Origin: Anaeramoeba ignava BMAN
Lineage: Eukaryota; Protista; Anaeramoebae
Length of the DNA stretch: 64,000 nucleotides
Assembly (NCBI GenBank): GCA_028826165.1
Contig: JAPDFW010000087.1
Location: forward strand, 124,001 to 188,000
Direction of reading: 5' to 3'
The notes beneath the pieces are model-generated. The model saw only the letters and a program-made list of their open reading frames with translations, had not been told where the DNA came from and did no database searches. A program made the translations under genes and the position numbers. Shown here one piece after another: positions 1-7,021 of the stretch (the first letter of the stretch is position 1; every line of letters starts with the position of its first letter).

Positions 1-1900
1 TTATATCAATTTTATATCAATTTTATATCAATTTTATATTAATTTTATATTAATTTTATATCAATTTTATAAAAATTTTATATTAATTTTAAATTAATTT
101 TAAATCAATTTTATATCAATTTTATATTAATTTTATATCAATTTTATATCAATTTTATATTAATTTTATATTAATTTTATATTAATTTCAAATCAATTTT
201 ATATCAATTCCAAATCAATTTTAAATTAATTTTATATCAATTCTAAATAAATTTTATATCAATTTTAAATCAATTTTATATCAATTTTATATTAATTTTA
301 AATCAATTTTATATCAATTTTTATATCAATTTTATATCAATTTTATATCAATTTTATATCAATTTTATATTAATTTTAAATCAATTTTAAATCAATTTTA
401 AATCAATTTTTATATTAATTTTATATTAATTTTATATCAATTTTATATTAATTTTTATATTAATTTTATATTAATTTTAAATTAATTTTAAATTAATTTT
501 ATATCAATTTTATATTAATTTTATATTAATTTTTATATCAATTTTATATTAATTTTATATCAATTTTATATCAATTTTTATATCTATTTTAAATCAATTT
601 TATATTAATTTTAAATCAATTTTATATTAATTTTATATCAATTTTATATCAATTTTATATCTATTTTAAATCAATTTTTAAATCAATTTTTAAATTAATT
701 TTATATTAATTTTATATCAATTTTATATCAATTTTATATCAATTTTTATATCAATTTTATATCAATTTTATATCAATTTTATATTAATTTTATATCAATT
801 TTATATTAATTTTTATATCAATTTTATATCAATTTTATATCAATTCCAAATCAATTCCAAATCAATTTTATATTAATTTTATATCAATTTTAAATTAATT
901 TTATATCAATTTTATATCAATTTTTATATTAATTTTATAATTAATTTTATATTAATTTTATATCAATTTTATATTAATTTTAAATCAATTTTATATCAAT
1001 TTTATATCAATTCTATATCAATTTTATATCAATTTTATATCAATTTTATATTAATTTTAAATCAATTTTATATTAATTTTATATTAATTTTATATCAATT
1101 TTATATCAATTTTATATTAATTTTATATCAATTTTATATCAATTTTATATCAATTTTAAATCAATTTTATATCAATTTTATACAATCAATTTTATATCAA
1201 TTTTATATCAATTTTATATCAATTTTAAATCAATTTTAAATCAATTTTATATTAATTTTTATATCAATTTTATATCAATTTTATATCAATTTTATATCAA
1301 TTTTATATCAATTTTAAATCAATTTTAAATTAATTTTATATTAATTTTATATCAATTTTATATTAATTTTATATCAATTTTTATATCAATTTTATATTAA
1401 TTTTTAAATTAATTTTATATTAATTTTATATCAATTTTAAATTAATTTTATATTAATTTTATATCAATTTTATATTAATTTTATATCAATTCCAAATCAA
1501 TTCCAAATCAATTTTAAATCAATTTTATATTAATTTTATATCAATTTTAAATTAATTTTATATTAATTTTAAATCAATTTTAAATCAATTTTAAATCAAT
1601 TTTATATCAATTTTATATTAATTTTAAATCAATTCCAAATCAATTTTATATTAATTCTATATCAATTTTATATTAATTTTAAATCAATTTTATATCAATT
1701 TTATATTAATTTTAAATCAATTCCAAATCAATTCCAAATCAATTCCAAATCAATTCCAAATCAATTTCAAATCAATTTTATATCAATTCCAAATCAATTC
1801 CAAATCAATTTTATATCAATTTTAAATCAATTTTAAATCAATTTTATATTAAATTCTAAATAAATTTTATATCAATTTTATAAAAAATTTTATATTAAAT
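1..1900. repeat. 11-bp tandem microsatellite (TTTTATATCAA/TTTTATATTAA/TTTTAAATCAA), probably filling an intron of the radical SAM-reductase gene
   Basis: Degenerate 11-mer repeated continuously from base 1; ends shortly before a TTAG acceptor at 1937-1940 that precedes coding sequence. Confidence 0.9.
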
Positions 1901-1940
1901 TCTATAAAAATCCTATAAAAAATTTCATTAAATTTGTTAG

Positions 1941-4935
1941 ATTGGAAACTTCTTACCAAACGAAAAAGCTTTTTTTATTGGGACTTTAGGAAGAAATTTA
2001 TCTTGTAAATTCCATAAACATTGTGTTAATGAATTCCTTCCAAAAAAAACAGATCGCGAAATTGAAGATATTTATAAAGGTGATCCAATGTCTCCTGAAG
2101 ATATAATTAAGAAATGTGAAGAAAATGAATGTAGAATTATCGTTTTTGCTTATTATGTAATTCATTAATTTTGAAAGGAAAAAAAAAATTTTTTATTTTT
2201 TAACAAATTTTTTTTTGGAATTAAATTAGGAACCAACAATTTATAGTGAATATGCTGTTGAAATTGCAAAGTAAATTAAAAATAAATATAAATTAAAAAA
2301 TAAAAATAAAATTAAATAATTGGAATTTTTTTTGCTTTTACAAGACTTGCAAAACAAAAAGAAATCAAAACAATTTACATTACAAACGGATACATGACAC
2401 AAGAAACAATAGAATACATTTTCCCCCACATAAACGCAGTAAATGTGAATCTGCACTCATTTAGAAACTCAACGTATCAGAAACTCACAAACGCAAGACT
2501 TGCTCCAATTTTAAAAAACATTGAAAGATTTTACAAACTTGGAGTTTGGGTCGAAATTACAACCCCAATAACTCCAGAACTCAACGACAAGCAAGAGGAA
2601 CTGGAGGAGATTGCACAATTCATCTCATCCTTGGATCCAAATATTCCTTGGCATATTGCACCTCATTATGGATTACAAACTCCAATTCAAGAATCAATAC
2701 TTGAAAAAGCTAGAGAAATTGGCGAAAAAGAAGGACTCAATTTTATTTATACTTATAATTACAACAAATTCAGCAAATCAAATCCTGTCAATTCCGAAGA
2801 GAATAAACCGCAAAATATCAACAATATCATTTGCCCAAATTGCAGAGAAATCGTTGCCAAAAGAACAAATACAAAAACAGAATATTTGGAAATGAGTAGT
2901 GAAGGAAAGTGCGCAAAATGCTCACAAATAATACCAGGAATTTGGGATTCGAAAACAGAGAATCTATTAGTTCCCAAAATAGAGCCAAATTCACCTGAAG
3001 CTCAGGAGATTATTTGGGGTTCAGGAATTCAAGAACAACAAAAATCCTTTTTTGAAGATTCTAAATTTGATAGAGATCATCGAGTCTTGATTTTATTTGG
3101 AACTCAAACAGGAACATCTGAAGAATACGCCCACCAATTAATGAGATCGATACAGGAAGATGAAAAAGCTGGTGGTTCGTTTGATGTAAGAGTTGTAGAT
3201 CTTGATAATTATCCAAGTCATTTACTTTTGACAGAATCATTAGTTATAATTGTTACTTCAACTTTTGGAGAAGGACAAGTAAGAAAAACAAACAAATTCA
3301 TCTCTTTTTTTATTTTAAATTTTTTTTTTTTAACAAAAAAAAAGCCGCCAACAAATGCAATGAAACTTTATGATTTTATTAAAAATCAAGATCCAAAAAA
3401 AACTCCTTTTTTACTTGAAAATTTAAAATTTGCCATTTTTGGTTTGGGTAGTTCAATGTATACTGAAAGATACCAAAAATTTGCTCGATTTCTTGATTCC
3501 AGATTGGAAGAATTGGGAGCAAAGAAACTTCACAGACTTGGTGAAGGTGATGTGATGAAATCAATTGATGAACCATTCTCGAAATGGACTCAATCTTTAT
3601 TAAACAAGTTGATCAAAAAGCATGGAGCATCAAAAACTGGAATTGTTTCCAAAAAATCACAACTTGAAGTTGTCTTTGAAGATGAAATGAAAAAAAATGC
3701 AAATATCAAAGAAAAAGATGAAAAACCAAAAATTGATACAACAGAAGTAAAACATTTTTTGTTTTTTTTTTTTACAAAAACAAGACAACAAAATTAATTT
3801 CAAAATTTTTTTTACTAAAATTTGATTTGGAAAGAAAATTCATCTTAGATTGGTGAACAAAAAAGAACTTTTAAATTATCCTCCACAAGAGAATCGAAAT
3901 TGCAAGCATTTAGAATTCGAAATTATTGGAGACGAGAAAAGAATATTTGAATCAGGAGATCACATTGGGATACATCCACCAAATCCAATCAAATTAGTGG
4001 AAAAATTTGGGAAATTATTGAAAATTGATTTGAATCGGAAAATCCAAATCCATCCTTTCTGGAAGCACGAAGGATTTTTGTCAATCCGAGAAGTGCTTAC
4101 AAAAGATTACAATCTGACATATCCAGTAAACCAAAACAAATTGAAGTCTTTGTCCAAACACTGTGTGAATCTGCAAGAACAAGAAGAACTTTACAAACTA
4201 TCGAAGGATCCGATGAAATATGATGAATGGATGATTTTCCATCAACGAGGAATTGTTGATGTTTTTGAGAATTTCCCACATATCGAGCTGTCATTTTCGC
4301 GACTTTTTGAGCTTCTTTCGAAACAACCGATGAGATTTTATTCGATCTCGTCTTCACCAAAAATATCACAAAAGAAATTCACATTAACAGTGCAAGTAAT
4401 GGAAAATGGATTGTGTTCGAATTTTTTAGCGAACATGAAAGAAGGAACAGAAATTGAAGCTCATTTGCAAAAATCATCGTTTCAAGTTGATCATTCAAAG
4501 CCGCTTGTTACAATCTCAACAGGAACAGGATTTGCACCAATTCGGGCTGTAATTCAAGACAGAACTACAATGGACAAAAAGGAGTTGGGTTGGTTGAATG
4601 TTTTCTACGGAGCAAGAACAGCCAAAATGGACGCGATTTATAAGGAAGAAATTGATCAACTCAAAAATCAAGGTTTTATCAATGAAGTTTTTTATGCGTT
4701 TTCTCGTGATCAAAAGGAAAAGATTTATGTACAACATCTTTTGCGTAAACAAAGTCAACTTGTTATTTCTTGTGTGAATGAAGGTGGTTCTATTCTTGTT
4801 TGCGGACAAATTGAGATGGGTTTGGAAATTCAATCTGTTTTAAAAGAGATTCTTGGAGAGAAAACTTTTAGTGATTTTTCACAAACTGGGAGATTTTTTT
4901 TAGAAACATGGAATTCGGGACACGTCAAAAAATAA
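1941..4935 (+). CDS. 5'-partial fusion protein: AmmeMemoRadiSam (AmrS)-like radical SAM domain + CPR-like diflavin (FMN/FAD/NADPH) oxidoreductase
   Basis: Spliced exons 1941-2156, 2230-2270, 2345-3278, 3345-3746, 3835-4935 join in frame through GT-AG introns. AmrS-like motifs: FLPNEKAFFIGTLG-RNLSCKFH, MSPEDII, AYYEPTIYSEYA, TNGYMT, GVWVEITT..LND, IPWH, CPNC..CAKC..IPGIW. Flavodoxin motifs: LFGTQTGTSE, TSTFGEGQPPTNA, FGLGSSMY. FAD/NADPH motifs: RFYSISSSP, GLCSNFL, TGTGFAP, AFSRDQKEKIYVQH, VCG, LETW. Confidence 0.85.
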
Positions 4936-5068: not shown

Positions 5069-7021
5069 ATGGAAATTGAAAAAATCATTCGTTGCGCAGA
5101 ATGTAATGCTGTGTATCAAGAAAACGCTTTTAGTTCACCATTATGCCAACATTCGTTTTGTGGGAATTGTTTTATGAAGATGAAAAAAGAAGCAATTGAG
5201 AACAACCCATATGAAAATTCCAACGAGACTGTATTCATTATGGAGTGTCCAGTATGTCATGTAGTGGGGAAAATTCAAGAGGACGAAGAGATGTATGCAA
5301 ACCGAGCGTTAAGCATGTTAGCGAAAACATTCACGAACATGCCATTTTCACGGCAAGAAAAGTCGCAACTGTGCGAGGAGTGCGAAGCGGAAGAAGCAAC
5401 TGAGAGATGCGAGGAATGCGGGGTGTACTTATGCAAGAAATGCGGAGAAAAAACACACTCTTTTCAGGTGCTTAAGTCCCATCATCGAGTGCCTTACAAC
5501 TCGAAAAATCCTGAGATCTCAAAAGAAAACTTGACATGTCCGCTCCATCCGAATAGGATGAAGGAGTATTTCTGCACAAAGTGCAATATGGCGATTTGTG
5601 TCGACTGCATTGTTCTCGGAGAACATCGCGAGCACGATATCGTTAAACTTGAGCATCTCGCGCAAGGAGCAGAGACTCGAGTCAGTTTAGCTTTGACAAG
5701 AAACGCGTCAATTATAAATCAATTAGAATCCAAGCTCAGTAAAATCCGTTCTTTGCAGGACTCCCTTGGCGACAAGCTGTCCCGCACAAAGTTGATTCTC
5801 GAGAAGCGCTTTATCGAGGCTTATGACGCGCTTGAGAACCGACAGGCTGCCTTGGTTCAGGAACTTGACGACGTCGGTTACACTGTTTCTGCCGGAATCC
5901 AACGGTTTTTGAATTCAAATAAAAGACAAATTAACGTTCTCACTTTGTGCAAGCAATTCGCCCAGCAAATTATACAGATTAACAATCCAATGGTTCTTCA
6001 TGAATTCGAAAATATTCTTGAGAAAATTCTTTCAACTGAAGGTTTTGATGAGAAGGAATTCAACAAGTCGCAATATGAAATAACCGCCGAATTCGAATCA
6101 GTTGAGGATGAGACACTTCGTCTGGCAACAATCACAGCACCAAAATTCTACGGTCTTTTAGGCCACCAAGTCCTTGAGATCAGCGACCGTTATGAATTGC
6201 CTGAAGAAGAAATGGACTTTTTCAAGGTTGTCATTAAATCAGGAGGTGTTTTAACAGTCAAAGCTTGGAACGGAACTGATGGCGGTTGCATTCGACTCAA
6301 CATCCGCGACAAATTGGTAATCGAATCAGGAGGCAAAATTGATCTCACCGGCTTGGGTTATCGCGGAGGTGAAGCCGTGAACCAAGCCACAGAAGGCCGA
6401 GCCAAACAAGGAGAGAGTCACAACGGAAAAGGGGGTGATCAACAAACTGCCAACAACGGAGGCGGCGGTGGTGGATTAGGAACTGGTGCCTTTGGCGGTT
6501 ACGGTGGAGGTGGCGGCGGCTATGGAACCAAAGGAAAAGACGCCGGCGCAAATACTTATTCCAGTGGTTTTCATCCTGGTGCAACTGGTGGAGACACTTA
6601 TGGTGATGAGCAAATCTCAACTCTTTATCGTGGATCAGGTGGTGGATCTGGTCATCCTTACTCAAACGGTCAAACAAAAGGCAAAGGTGGTAACGGTGGT
6701 GGCGCATTGTTGATTAGAGCTAGAATGGTCATCAATGACGGTGAGATTCTTTGTGATGGTGAAAAAGGTGAAGACGGTATTTCTGGTACTTATGGTTCTG
6801 GTGGTGGCGGTGGAAGTGGTGGATCAATATTGATCTTCGCAAATCTTATTAATAATGGCAAAATTTCTGCTCTTGGTGGAAAAGGTGGTGTTAATACTAA
6901 TCCGGGTTATCAAGGTATTTGCTCAAATGGTGGTGATGGTGGTGATGGAAGAATTGCTCTAAAGGGAATTCTTAAAGGAAATCCAACAACTCCAAACGCT
7001 TTTCTTTTAAAGAAAAAGTGA
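5069..7021 (+). CDS. TRIM-like E3 ligase: RING + two B-boxes + coiled coil + C-terminal glycine-rich domain
   Basis: Intronless 650-aa ORF. RING CAEC..CQHSFCGNC..CPVC, B-box CEEC..CEEC..LCKKC..H..HH, B-box CPLH..FCTKC..ICVDC..H..H, helical region, then a GG-rich domain of ~270 aa. Confidence 0.85.
   Translation: MEIEKIIRCAECNAVYQENAFSSPLCQHSFCGNCFMKMKKEAIENNPYENSNETVFIMECPVCHVVGKIQEDEEMYANRALSMLAKTFTNMPFSRQEKSQLCEECEAEEATERCEECGVYLCKKCGEKTHSFQVLKSHHRVPYNSKNPEISKENLTCPLHPNRMKEYFCTKCNMAICVDCIVLGEHREHDIVKLEHLAQGAETRVSLALTRNASIINQLESKLSKIRSLQDSLGDKLSRTKLILEKRFIEAYDALENRQAALVQELDDVGYTVSAGIQRFLNSNKRQINVLTLCKQFAQQIIQINNPMVLHEFENILEKILSTEGFDEKEFNKSQYEITAEFESVEDETLRLATITAPKFYGLLGHQVLEISDRYELPEEEMDFFKVVIKSGGVLTVKAWNGTDGGCIRLNIRDKLVIESGGKIDLTGLGYRGGEAVNQATEGRAKQGESHNGKGGDQQTANNGGGGGGLGTGAFGGYGGGGGGYGTKGKDAGANTYSSGFHPGATGGDTYGDEQISTLYRGSGGGSGHPYSNGQTKGKGGNGGGALLIRARMVINDGEILCDGEKGEDGISGTYGSGGGGGSGGSILIFANLINNGKISALGGKGGVNTNPGYQGICSNGGDGGDGRIALKGILKGNPTTPNAFLLKKK

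What the first reader, a model, noticed from the sequence alone, without database searches (positions are those of the whole stretch)
1983..2030. Non-canonical cluster motif: CxxxCxxC replaced by RxxxCxxHxxC
Seen: an exon absent from the ORF track reads GTLG-R-NLS-C-KF-H-KH-C (AGA 1992, TGT 2004, CAT 2013, TGT 2022) where AmrS proteins have GTxG-C-NxR-C-xF-C. The family DLK motif also reads NLH. Both Cys losses need two base substitutions, so homopolymer error is unlikely. Inference: either a catalytically dead radical SAM fold repurposed as a binding or regulatory domain on an active reductase, or a new His/Cys-ligated metal site. The C-terminal CPNC..CAKC metal ribbon is retained.
Basis: partly seen in the sequence, partly recalled or inferred. 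Interest (0 to 1): 0.8.

Follow-up and report, generated by a model that had tools for sequence, protein, structure and literature searches.

The report
Radical SAM domain without its cluster site
An anaerobic amoeba (Anaeramoeba ignava) transcribes a fourth, fast-evolving copy of a "radical SAM enzyme plus built-in NADPH reductase" gene. Its radical-making iron-sulfur and SAM-binding residues are gone, but the fold, two other four-cysteine sites and the reductase are kept, so it is most likely a repurposed, non-radical domain and not an error or a dead gene.

Summary
Window 1980-2036 encodes GTLG-R-NLS-C-KF-HKH-C-VNEF at the position where three paralogs in the same genome, and the A. flamelloides homolog, have GxxGCNFxCxFCQNW. 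A spliced transcript contig and a transcriptome-derived 961-aa protein (P0060, matching NCBI KAJ5071532.1) carry the same residues. No alternative exon with a canonical motif exists.

One correction: the best alignment keeps Cys2 and Cys3 and puts a 3-residue insertion (HKH) between them. Only Cys1 is replaced, by Arg.

The change is not isolated. The DPIEKKP..H motif, the DLK motif (NLH; the Asp matches the K+/SAM ligand Asp129 of PFL-AE) and other conserved positions are also lost: 17 of 66 conserved AmrS columns, against 3-5 in the canonical copies. Both Cys4 sites, the predicted PFL-AE-like fold and the diflavin reductase motifs are kept.

Faster evolution is confined to the radical SAM half (branch about 1.95 against 0.2-0.4). 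The reductase half evolves like its paralogs.

Best reading: a selectively maintained paralog that no longer does radical SAM chemistry. A new His/Cys metal site is untested.

Three bacterial or metagenomic AmrS-like lineages show parallel losses.

The scan had already noted this gene, and the canonical fusion elsewhere in this genome.

The parts
1..1940 (+). 3' part of intron 1. The whole intron is about 2.65 kb. It starts at C88:123293, outside the window, just after exon 1 at L016:9101-9292. Window 1-1895 is an 11-bp tandem repeat (TTATATCAATT).
   Evidence: The acceptor TTTGTTAG|ATTGGA at 1940/1941 and GC 7.6% come. P0060 joins the exon 1 product directly to the exon 2 product.
1941..2156 (+). 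Exon 2 (72 codons), residues 65-136 of P0060. It covers beta-1 and the degenerate cluster loop of the AmrS-like radical SAM domain.
   Evidence: TIGR04337 matches profile positions 64-125. The RNA contig lies on it with 0 differences.
1980..2036 (+). Degenerate cluster motif GTLG-R82-NLS-C86-KF-H89-K-H91-C92-VNEF. It stands in place of GxxG-C-NFx-C-xF-C-QNW.
2013..2021 (+). Approximate 9-nt in-frame insertion (His-Lys-His) relative to all canonical homologs. Its exact placement depends on the alignment.
   Evidence: MAFFT alignments.
2230..2270 (+). Exon 3 (41 nt), encoding EPTIYSEYAVEIA(K). It carries the YxEP (GGE-like) motif, with Asn changed to Tyr in the preceding exon.
   Evidence: The 36 unplaced letters of RNA contig record 9 between its two flanking pieces are consistent with it.
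2345..3278 (+). Exon 4. It encodes the rest of the radical SAM barrel, the C-terminal Cys4 ribbon, a linker and the first half of the flavodoxin (FMN) domain.
   Evidence: The RNA contig piece 2341-3278 supports it.
2448..2456 (+). NLH in place of the family's DLK. The Asp position corresponds to PFL-AE Asp129, a ligand of the active-site K+ that also binds the SAM carboxylate.
   Evidence: the last is PMC10267522.
2832..2921 (+). Retained C-terminal Cys4 ribbon (C313, C316, C339, C342).
3345..3746 (+). Exon 5: the second half of the flavodoxin domain plus the connecting region.
   Evidence: The GT..AG joint 3278>3345 is seen in the RNA contig.
3835..4935 (+). Exon 6: FAD_binding_1 and NAD_binding_1 (CPR/CysJ-like), ending in stop TAA at 4933-4935. 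GCR reads GAR. The C-terminal Trp is kept, followed by a 7-residue tail.

Best explanation
The gene at window 1941-4935, with its first exon 2.65 kb upstream, is the fourth copy in Anaeramoeba ignava of a fusion between an AmrS-type radical SAM domain and an NADPH diflavin (FMN/FAD) reductase. It is the divergent copy.

In the three canonical copies the reductase presumably passes electrons NADPH > FAD > FMN to the SAM-binding [4Fe-4S] cluster. That step is inferred.

In this copy the radical SAM half has lost what reductive SAM cleavage needs. Cys1 of the CX3CX2C triad is Arg. The Cys2-Cys3 spacing is lengthened by an HKH insertion. The Asp and Lys of the DLK motif and the whole DPIEKKP..H motif are replaced.

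The rest is kept: the partial TIM-barrel fold, the N-terminal and C-terminal Cys4 sites, and the flavin and NADPH motifs. The gene is intact, correctly spliced and transcribed.

Most likely it is a selectively maintained pseudoenzyme-type domain. It no longer makes a 5'-deoxyadenosyl radical. It probably serves as a binding or electron-relay module, through its remaining metal sites, on a still-functional reductase.

Shown here: the sequence, the transcript, the pattern of losses and retentions, and the domain-specific acceleration.

Inferred: loss of SAM cleavage, activity of the reductase, and the present role.
For: 1. The motif is confirmed in the genome, in a spliced RNA contig and in a transcriptome ORF.
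2. The three paralogs on C104, C24 and C60 and the A. flamelloides homolog P0002 all keep GCNFxCxFCQNW.
3. At 66 columns conserved in at least 80% of 68 full-length AmrS homologs, this copy departs at 17 and the canonical Anaeramoeba copies at 3-5. The losses cluster in DPIEKKP..H, Cys1 and DLK. All 8 auxiliary cysteines, NG, E220, ND and PWH are kept.
4. TIGR04337 scores 198.8 bits, below the cut-off of 220, against 347-352 for the canonical copies. The Pfam Radical_SAM match starts only at residue 100, after the motif.
5. In the radical SAM half the canonical copies are 62-70% identical to each other and this copy is 41-47% identical to them. In the reductase half all pairs are 34-42% identical. 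Terminal branches are 1.94-1.96 against 0.21-0.40 for the radical SAM half, and 1.25 against 0.88-1.21 for the reductase half.
6. The AF2 model has pLDDT 89.9 and pTM 0.90, and its best solved match is PFL-AE (E 1.7e-12). Confidence falls to 50-65 only around residues 91-110. The canonical control scores 85-96 in that stretch.
7. PFL-AE Asp129, which aligns with the family's DLK Asp, ligates the active-site K+ that also binds the SAM carboxylate.
8. The reductase aligns end to end with rat CPR at E 2.6e-70. In the P0060 sequence the FMN, FAD (RxYS) and NADPH (GTGxAP) motifs and the C-terminal Trp are present (motif assignment from my own knowledge of the CPR family).
9. All five introns are GT..AG and the open frame runs 961 codons.
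Against: No biochemistry was done. Radical SAM enzymes with non-canonical cysteine patterns exist (ThiC, HmdB and QueE variants; my own knowledge). So two Cys plus a remote Cys or a His cannot be excluded from sequence alone.

No ortholog with the same degenerate motif was found in A. flamelloides. Purifying selection on the new state therefore cannot be shown by comparing species.

The quick trees leave the order of duplications unresolved.

The Cys of the reductase GCR motif is Ala, so hydride transfer may be slowed.

The motif region is not covered by the DNA-run contigs that were laid.
Confidence: 0.7

Rival explanations
1. It is still an active radical SAM enzyme with a non-canonical cluster site. 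C86 and C92, together with a third ligand, would bind a [4Fe-4S] cluster that still cleaves SAM using electrons from the fused reductase. The third ligand could be His89 or His91, or a remote cysteine such as the extra Cys18 in the N-terminal CCCC run.
For: Two of the three cysteines remain, next to two histidines. The fold, the Glu of YxEP, and the NG and ND motifs are kept. The fused reductase is retained. An extra Cys stands at residue 18 where the canonical copies have Thr.
Against: The DLK Asp and Lys and the DPIEKKP..H motif are lost at the same time. The Asp equivalent in PFL-AE helps hold the SAM carboxylate through K+. The radical SAM half evolves 5-9 times faster than in the paralogs. 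The loop after the motif is predicted with low confidence, unlike in the canonical control.
Confidence: 0.1
2. It is a new His/Cys metal site without radical chemistry. The C86-x2-H89-x-H91-C92 loop would bind Zn, Fe or a small Fe-S centre. That centre would act as a redox or sensing site fed by the FMN domain.
For: Two His and two Cys lie within seven residues at the former cluster loop. The domain is kept intact next to a complete reductase.
Against: There is no ortholog in which to test conservation of the His residues. The bacterial lineages with parallel losses have no His there (SNLPCTG, SNFSCEY, ENFRCRFC). The loop is modelled with low confidence. No coordinates were available to check geometry.
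Confidence: 0.12
3. It is a decaying pseudogene. After duplication the copy lost function and is drifting, and transcription is residual.
For: Catalytic residues are lost and the radical SAM half has a long branch. No ortholog was found in the sister species.
Against: The open frame runs 961 codons across six exons in a genome whose introns are about 8% GC. All splice sites are GT..AG and are used in the mRNA. A complete ORF was recovered from the transcriptome. All 8 auxiliary cysteines and 49 of the 66 conserved columns are kept. The reductase half evolves no faster than in the active paralogs. A branch of about 1.9 changes per site without a single stop or frameshift is not what neutral drift would give (inference).
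Confidence: 0.06
4. It is an assembly, sequencing or gene-model artefact. The true transcript would carry the cysteines or use another exon.
For: The DNA-run contigs laid here do not cover 1900-2321.
Against: An RNA contig from a different study matches 1940-2157 with 0 differences and uses the predicted splice sites. A transcriptome-derived protein and the NCBI model agree. No CxxxCxxC exists in any + frame of C88:122001-129000. TIGR04337 finds no other exon on C88. The differences are multi-base substitutions plus a 9-nt in-frame insertion, not homopolymer slips.
Confidence: 0.02

Closest known systems
AmmeMemoRadiSam system radical SAM enzyme (AmrS, TIGR04337), and the three canonical AmrS-diflavin reductase fusions of A. 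ignava (P0001, P0061, P0216) plus A. flamelloides P0002
   Same: It has the same domain order (AmrS-like, Cys4 ribbon, flavodoxin, FAD, NADPH). The first-intron position and phase match C104. The N- and C-terminal Cys4 sites and the predicted fold are the same. It lies inside the Anaeramoeba clade with SH-aLRT 100.
   Different: Cys1 is Arg. An HKH insertion sits before Cys3. DPIEKKP..H and DLK are lost, and there is a 7-residue deletion after PWH. The TIGR04337 score is below the cut-off. The radical SAM half evolves 5-9 times faster.
Pyruvate formate-lyase activating enzyme (PFL-AE, 3C8F/3CB8), the closest solved structure
   Same: It shares the partial TIM-barrel radical SAM fold (Foldseek E 1.7e-12, TMt 0.76). 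The DLK motif aligns with PFL-AE D129-L-K131.
   Different: PFL-AE has CX3CX2C and Asp129 ligating the K+/SAM site. Here these read R..C.....C and Asn/His. PFL-AE has no Cys4 extensions and no fused reductase.
Bacterial/metagenomic AmrS-like proteins that lack cluster cysteines (P0075 = MCX5834565.1 from a Deltaproteobacteria MAG, P0159, P0184)
   Same: They show the same pattern of loss and retention. Cys1 is lost (in two of them Cys3 too), DPIEKKP and DLK are altered, both Cys4 sites, NG and PWH are kept, and their branches are long.
   Different: They are stand-alone proteins of about 340 aa with no reductase. They lie elsewhere in the tree, in at least two places, so the losses are independent. 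They have no His-rich insertion.
Eukaryotic TYW1 (flavodoxin domain fused to a radical SAM domain)
   Same: It is a eukaryotic radical SAM domain fused to a flavodoxin-type FMN domain that is thought to supply its electrons (PMC9186531, seen).
   Different: TYW1 has the flavodoxin at the N-terminus, no FAD/NADPH module, and an intact SAM cluster. It is a different radical SAM subfamily.
HemW / CgdH2-type radical SAM superfamily proteins that act as heme chaperones
   Same: They are radical SAM-fold proteins whose role is binding and transfer, not radical catalysis (bioRxiv 10.1101/2023.03.30.534706).
   Different: They keep the CX3CX2C cysteines, belong to the HemN-like subgroup, and have no reductase fusion.

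Membership tests
Radical SAM superfamily (PF04055), as a catalytic member | Three-cysteine motif (CX3CX2C or a known variant) that ligates the SAM-binding [4Fe-4S] cluster | tested here: not met
   The motif reads R82-x3-C86-x5-C92. All canonical homologs have C-x3-C-x2-C in the same columns.
Radical SAM superfamily (PF04055), as a catalytic member | Partial TIM-barrel fold, with a Pfam score above the gathering threshold | tested here: met
   PF04055 scores 59.3 bits against a cut-off of 29.5, but the match covers only residues 100-242 and so skips the motif. The AF2 model has pLDDT 89.9 and its best PDB match is PFL-AE at E 1.7e-12.
Radical SAM superfamily (PF04055), as a catalytic member | SAM-binding residues (the Glu of the GGE-like motif, and the Asp/Lys of the DLK motif in the PFL-AE-like branch) | tested here: not met
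   The Glu of YxEP is kept (E137). DLK reads NLH. The Asp aligns with PFL-AE Asp129, a ligand of the K+/SAM-carboxylate site.
Radical SAM superfamily (PF04055), as a catalytic member | Reductive cleavage of SAM to a 5'-deoxyadenosyl radical | not testable with these tools
   This needs anaerobic protein, EPR and a 5'-deoxyadenosine assay.
AmrS (TIGR04337, AmmeMemoRadiSam system radical SAM enzyme) | Whole-domain score at or above the curated cut-off of 220 bits | tested here: not met
   It scores 198.8 bits. P0001, P0061 and P0002 score 351.9, 346.6 and 351.1 bits.
AmrS (TIGR04337, AmmeMemoRadiSam system radical SAM enzyme) | Family-specific N-terminal Cys4 and C-terminal Cys4 sites | tested here: met
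   C17, C20, C24 and C34, and C313, C316, C339 and C342, are all present.
AmrS (TIGR04337, AmmeMemoRadiSam system radical SAM enzyme) | Family-specific DPIEKKP..H motif before beta-1 | tested here: not met
   It reads ESINYGM..N. All eight positions are changed.
AmrS (TIGR04337, AmmeMemoRadiSam system radical SAM enzyme) | AMMECR1 (AmrA) and Memo (AmrB) partners present in the same genome | tested here: met
   The genome has 4 AMMECR1 loci and 3-4 Memo loci, none of them adjacent to this gene. Any functional link is untested.
Diflavin reductase (CPR/CysJ-like: Flavodoxin_1 + FAD_binding_1 + NAD_binding_1) | All three domains score above the Pfam thresholds, in the canonical order | tested here: met
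   Flavodoxin_1 scores 105.6 bits, FAD_binding_1 116.9 and NAD_binding_1 50.8. It aligns with rat CPR at E 2.6e-70 over residues 11-555 of the reductase half.
Diflavin reductase (CPR/CysJ-like: Flavodoxin_1 + FAD_binding_1 + NAD_binding_1) | Cofactor-binding and catalytic residues (FMN loops, RxYS, GTGxAP, the Cys of GCR, the C-terminal aromatic residue) | tested here: inconclusive
   The FMN loops, RFYSIS, GTGFAP and the C-terminal Trp are present. GCR reads GAR, whereas the paralogs keep the Cys. A 7-residue tail follows the Trp. Activity was not measured.

The most novel reading that the evidence does not exclude
The former cluster loop (R82, C86, H89, H91, C92) may have become a new His/Cys-ligated metal or small Fe-S centre. 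Together with the two retained Cys4 sites, it would receive electrons from the fused NADPH-diflavin reductase. That would make a SAM-independent redox enzyme or redox sensor built on a radical SAM scaffold. The parallel cysteine-less AmrS-like proteins of bacteria would then point to a second, non-radical activity hidden in the AmrS family.
Probability: 0.12. Interest if true: 0.75.

Novelty: new variant of a known kind. Interest (0 to 1): 0.45.

Why it matters
AmrS is a widespread radical SAM family of unknown function. Its partners, AMMECR1 and MEMO1, are conserved up to humans.

Anaeramoeba carries self-sufficient AmrS-reductase fusions that should be easy to assay. This fourth copy is a natural cluster-site knockout of that design. 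It keeps the fold, the two Cys4 sites and the reductase.

Comparing it with its canonical paralogs could separate what the SAM cluster does from what the auxiliary sites and the protein surface do.

The parallel cysteine-less AmrS-like proteins in bacteria suggest this is a recurrent, selected state and not an accident.

On its own, however, a degenerate paralog after gene duplication is a common evolutionary outcome, and no new chemistry has been shown.

Tried and rejected
**How the spliced model was handled.** Exon pieces were searched one by one, by reference. The full-length product was used only through the database protein id P0060 that a tool returned. In scripts, exons were translated separately; exon DNA was concatenated once, only to compute a GC fraction.

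**Dead ends.**
- The first two family scans failed on a frame error of mine.
- A PDB sequence search with exon 4 alone found only the flavodoxin part.
- A word search with the 689-aa ORF of paralog C104 returned only P0001 and P0002 among the fusions. Word searches with P0060 itself returned A. ignava proteins only. Their sensitivity is limited, since one search also missed P0002.
- Run X7 (organism B) gave only low-complexity matches at 80% or higher DNA likeness. It says nothing about an ortholog.
- X1 DNA contigs do not cover 1900-2321.
- The careful ML tree did not finish in time, so quick trees were used.
- Literature searches for AmmeMemoRadiSam, for Anaeramoeba with radical SAM, for radical SAM pseudoenzymes, and within the Anaeramoeba genome paper found nothing on this gene or fusion.

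**Considered and rejected.**
- An alternative upstream exon with a canonical motif: none exists.
- Sequencing or assembly error.
- A separate lateral transfer from a degenerate bacterial AmrS lineage. The copy groups with the Anaeramoeba clade at SH-aLRT 100, and shares the fusion architecture and the first-intron position with its paralogs.
- A neutral pseudogene: see the rival explanations.
Full report
**What is in the sequence**

Window 1980-2036 (+ strand) reads GTLG-R-NLS-C-KF-H-K-H-C-VNEF. The codons are AGA at 1992, TGT at 2004, CAT at 2013, CAT at 2019 and TGT at 2022. The stretch lies in an exon without a start codon, so a bacterial-style ORF list misses it.

Window 1-1895 is a single 11-bp tandem repeat array. 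The window is contig C88:124001-188000 of a 42.8-Mb genome. The repeat continues upstream for another 0.7 kb. Just before it lies an exon that starts with ATG and encodes the N-terminal AmrS segment with a Cys-rich motif (L016:9101-9292).

The gene model has six exons:
- exon 1: L016:9101-9292
- exon 2: window 1941-2156
- exon 3: 2230-2270
- exon 4: 2345-3278
- exon 5: 3345-3746
- exon 6: 3835-4935

All introns are GT..AG. The CDS is 2886 nt, giving 961 codons plus the stop.

**What the gene is**

The exons were scanned one by one, by reference. They match TIGR04337 (AmmeMemoRadiSam system radical SAM enzyme, AmrS), then Flavodoxin_1, FAD_binding_1 and NAD_binding_1 of the CPR/CysJ type.

The exhaustive protein search with exon 4 returned a 961-aa database protein, P0060, that is 100% identical over that exon. 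P0060 is a complete ORF from the Anaeramoeba ignava transcriptome in EukProt. Its cluster mate is NCBI KAJ5071532.1, named 'nitric oxide synthase-related', on a contig of 321,525 bases, the length of C88. It equals my model except for one Lys/Glu allele at window 3991. The same allele appears in DNA and RNA contigs. From then on the full-length protein was used by its id.

**Is it real, or an error or a wrong exon?**

Run X4 comes from a different study than the DNA runs and behaves as a transcriptome assembly. Its contig record 9 lies on 1940-2157, 2341-3278, 3345-3746 and 3835-3932. It skips each predicted intron. It has 0 differing letters over 1940-2157 and extends 305 letters beyond 1940, which fits exon 1 plus a leader.

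P0060 joins the exon 1 and exon 2 products directly.

No CxxxCxxC occurs in any + frame of C88:122001-129000. TIGR04337 finds no other exon on C88.

Both were tested and neither holds. One caveat remains: the DNA-run contigs laid here do not cover 1900-2321, so the independent support is RNA-derived.

**Correction to the observation**

MAFFT aligns the motif as GCNFxCxF---CQNW against GRNLSCKFHKHCVNEF. Cys1 is replaced by Arg. Cys2 is kept. Cys3 is kept but pushed three residues away by an HKH insertion. The spacing is therefore R-x3-C-x5-C, not a simple Cys-to-His change. Either way these are multi-base changes plus a 9-nt in-frame insertion, not homopolymer slips.

**Context in the genome**

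A. ignava has three further AmrS-reductase fusion genes, on C104, C24 and C60. All have GCNF[ST]C[SK]FCQNW. Their products are P0001, P0216 and P0061, of 951-953 aa. A. flamelloides has at least one canonical fusion, P0002.

The first intron sits at the same codon boundary in C104 (after DPIEKKP there, after ESINYGM here) and has the same GTTTGT donor. In C104 that intron is also full of microsatellite; in C24 the same two exons lie about 1.4 kb apart. The window's gene is therefore a paralog that arose by duplication within the eukaryote.

The genome also has 4 AMMECR1 and 3-4 Memo loci.

**The loss is not confined to one motif**

I aligned 68 full-length AmrS homologs and the Anaeramoeba proteins. 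In that alignment 66 columns are at least 80% conserved. P0060 departs at 17 of them. The canonical Anaeramoeba copies depart at 3-5.

| Feature | Canonical copies | P0060 |
|---|---|---|
| Motif before beta-1 | DPIEKKP..H | ESINYGM..N |
| SAM-cluster cysteines | C, C, C | R, C, C |
| DLK motif | DLK | NLH |
| YxEP motif | YNEP | YYEP |
| N-terminal Cys4 | present | kept (C17, C20, C24, C34) |
| C-terminal Cys4 | present | kept (C313, C316, C339, C342) |
| NG, E220, ND, PWH | present | kept |

A few further conserved positions are also changed.

A profile alignment places DLK on PFL-AE D129-L-K131. In PFL-AE, Asp129 is a ligand of the active-site K+ that also binds the SAM carboxylate (PMC10267522).

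The radical SAM half of P0060 scores 198.8 bits on TIGR04337, below the curated cut-off of 220. The canonical copies score 347-352 bits. The Pfam Radical_SAM match begins only at residue 100, after the motif. In P0001 it begins at residue 79.

**Domain-specific acceleration**

| Measure | Radical SAM half | Reductase half |
|---|---|---|
| Identity among the canonical copies | 62-70% | 35-42% |
| Identity of P0060 to them | 41-47% | 34-36% |
| Terminal branch, P0060 | 1.94-1.96 | 1.25 |
| Terminal branch, canonical copies | 0.21-0.40 | 0.88-1.21 |

P0060 stays inside the Anaeramoeba clade (SH-aLRT 100) even when other degenerate sequences are added. The order of duplications is unresolved, and these are quick trees.

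**Fold**

An AlphaFold2 model of P0060:1-350 has mean pLDDT 89.9 and pTM 0.90. It shows the strand-helix pattern of a radical SAM barrel. Its best solved match is PFL-AE (3C8F, E 1.7e-12, TMt 0.76).

Confidence drops only at residues 91-110, just after the altered loop (block means 50 and 65), and at 291-310, where there is an insertion before the ribbon. A control model of the canonical P0001, built with the same alignment, scores 97.0 overall and 92 and 85 in those post-loop blocks.

No coordinates are available, so ligand geometry could not be examined.

**Reductase half**

It aligns with rat CPR over its whole length (E 2.6e-70). By my reading of the P0060 sequence against the CPR family, it has the FMN loops, RFYSIS, GTGFAP, the FSRDQ..YVQH block and a C-terminal Trp. 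Two points depart from its paralogs: GCR reads GAR, and seven residues follow the Trp. It looks functional, but this is inferred.

**Relatives elsewhere**

The exhaustive search of representatives shows only three clusters of AmrS-flavodoxin fusions:
- P0060 itself;
- P0061, which represents the canonical Anaeramoeba copies;
- P0062, a 559-aa canonical AmrS-flavodoxin protein from an unnamed assembly.

Word searches with either half of P0060 found only A. ignava proteins as close relatives. So no A. flamelloides ortholog of the degenerate copy is in these databases. This fits a lineage-specific copy. It also means conservation of R/C/H/C across species cannot be tested.

Unexpectedly, three prokaryotic or metagenomic AmrS-like clusters show the same pattern:
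- P0075, a Deltaproteobacteria MAG protein seen on 24 contigs in a conserved neighbourhood;
- P0159;
- P0184.

In each, Cys1 is lost (in two of them Cys3 as well), DPIEKKP and DLK are altered, and both Cys4 sites, NG and PWH are kept. They fall in at least two places of the tree, away from Anaeramoeba. So the radical SAM site of this family has been lost repeatedly while the rest stayed under constraint.

**Interpretation**

The combination points to a maintained protein whose AmrS-like domain no longer performs reductive SAM cleavage. That combination is:
- an intact, spliced, transcribed 961-codon gene;
- catalytic and SAM-site residues lost together;
- the structural core and eight auxiliary cysteines retained;
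- acceleration only in the radical SAM half;
- a reductase that looks normal.

I estimate about 0.7 for this reading. What the domain does now is inferred. It may be a docking or electron-relay module on an NADPH-diflavin reductase, perhaps working with the AMMECR1/Memo paralogs or the canonical fusions.

The rivals are:
- a still-active enzyme with a non-canonical cluster (about 0.10);
- a new His/Cys metal site (about 0.12, and compatible with loss of radical chemistry);
- a drifting pseudogene (about 0.06);
- an artefact (about 0.02).

**Comparison with what is known, and novelty**

No paper found here describes AmrS-diflavin reductase fusions or this copy. An earlier follow-up of this scan on another piece of the genome reached the same view for the canonical fusion.

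The nearest known designs are TYW1 (flavodoxin plus radical SAM; PMC9186531) and self-sufficient diflavin fusions such as P450 BM3 and NOS. The nearest precedent for radical SAM folds with binding roles is the HemW/CgdH2 group, which keeps its cysteines.

As a catalytic radical SAM or AmrS member, the window's protein fails tested defining features. As a diflavin reductase it passes the domain tests. I class it as a new variant of a known kind, of moderate interest (0.45). Its main value is as a natural cluster-site-negative counterpart to an easily assayable family of unknown function.

Noticed in passing
L016:9305-10000 and window 1-1895 (C88:123305-125895): Intron 1 of this gene is about 2.65 kb and consists almost entirely of one 11-bp tandem repeat (TTATATCAATT, about 235 copies, 7.6% GC), yet it is spliced out. 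The C104 paralog has a roughly 1.3-kb first intron, also full of microsatellite, at the same codon position. In C24 the matching exons lie about 1.4 kb apart; that intron was not read.
   Followed up: partly
window 3933, 3963, 3991: Three linked variants (C>T, C>T, A>G) appear in both DNA (X1) and RNA (X4) contigs at about half the depth. The last changes Lys to Glu and is the form present in P0060. The culture therefore holds two alleles or haplotypes.
   Followed up: partly
window 2492-2753: A microbial mat metagenome (run X6) holds a 262-nt contig with a single difference (2715 G>A). A near-identical Anaeramoeba therefore lives in that mat.
   Followed up: no
L020:6001-7032 (JGI 3300025145) and 23 further contigs: A bacterial AmrS-like protein that lacks two of the three cluster cysteines (P0075/P0211, Deltaproteobacteria MAG) sits in a conserved neighbourhood. 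A DJ-1/PfpI gene, a GH57 gene and a GT4 glycosyltransferase gene lie upstream, and CoA-transferase genes lie downstream. No AMMECR1 or Memo gene is nearby.
   Followed up: partly
P0062 (Logan contig of 1795 nt): A 559-aa protein from an unnamed assembly joins a canonical AmrS domain to a flavodoxin domain only, with no FAD/NADPH module. It may be a different or truncated version of the fusion. In one search it grouped next to the Anaeramoeba clade, but it did not.
   Followed up: no
window 3279-3344: Intron 4 is 66 nt long, in frame and free of stop codons. A bacterial-style ORF call (2394-3797) therefore reads straight through it and adds 22 spurious residues.
   Followed up: yes
G000: C73:156707, C93:908315, C83:87116, C13:467365 (AMMECR1); C1:403846, C60:379293, C57:39824 and C57:42450 (Memo): The genome has four AMMECR1 loci and three to four Memo loci, about as many as its four AmrS-like genes. 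None is adjacent to an AmrS gene.
   Followed up: no
window 5069-7021: The next gene encodes a B-box/coiled-coil (TRIM-like) protein ending in a long glycine-rich region.
   Followed up: no
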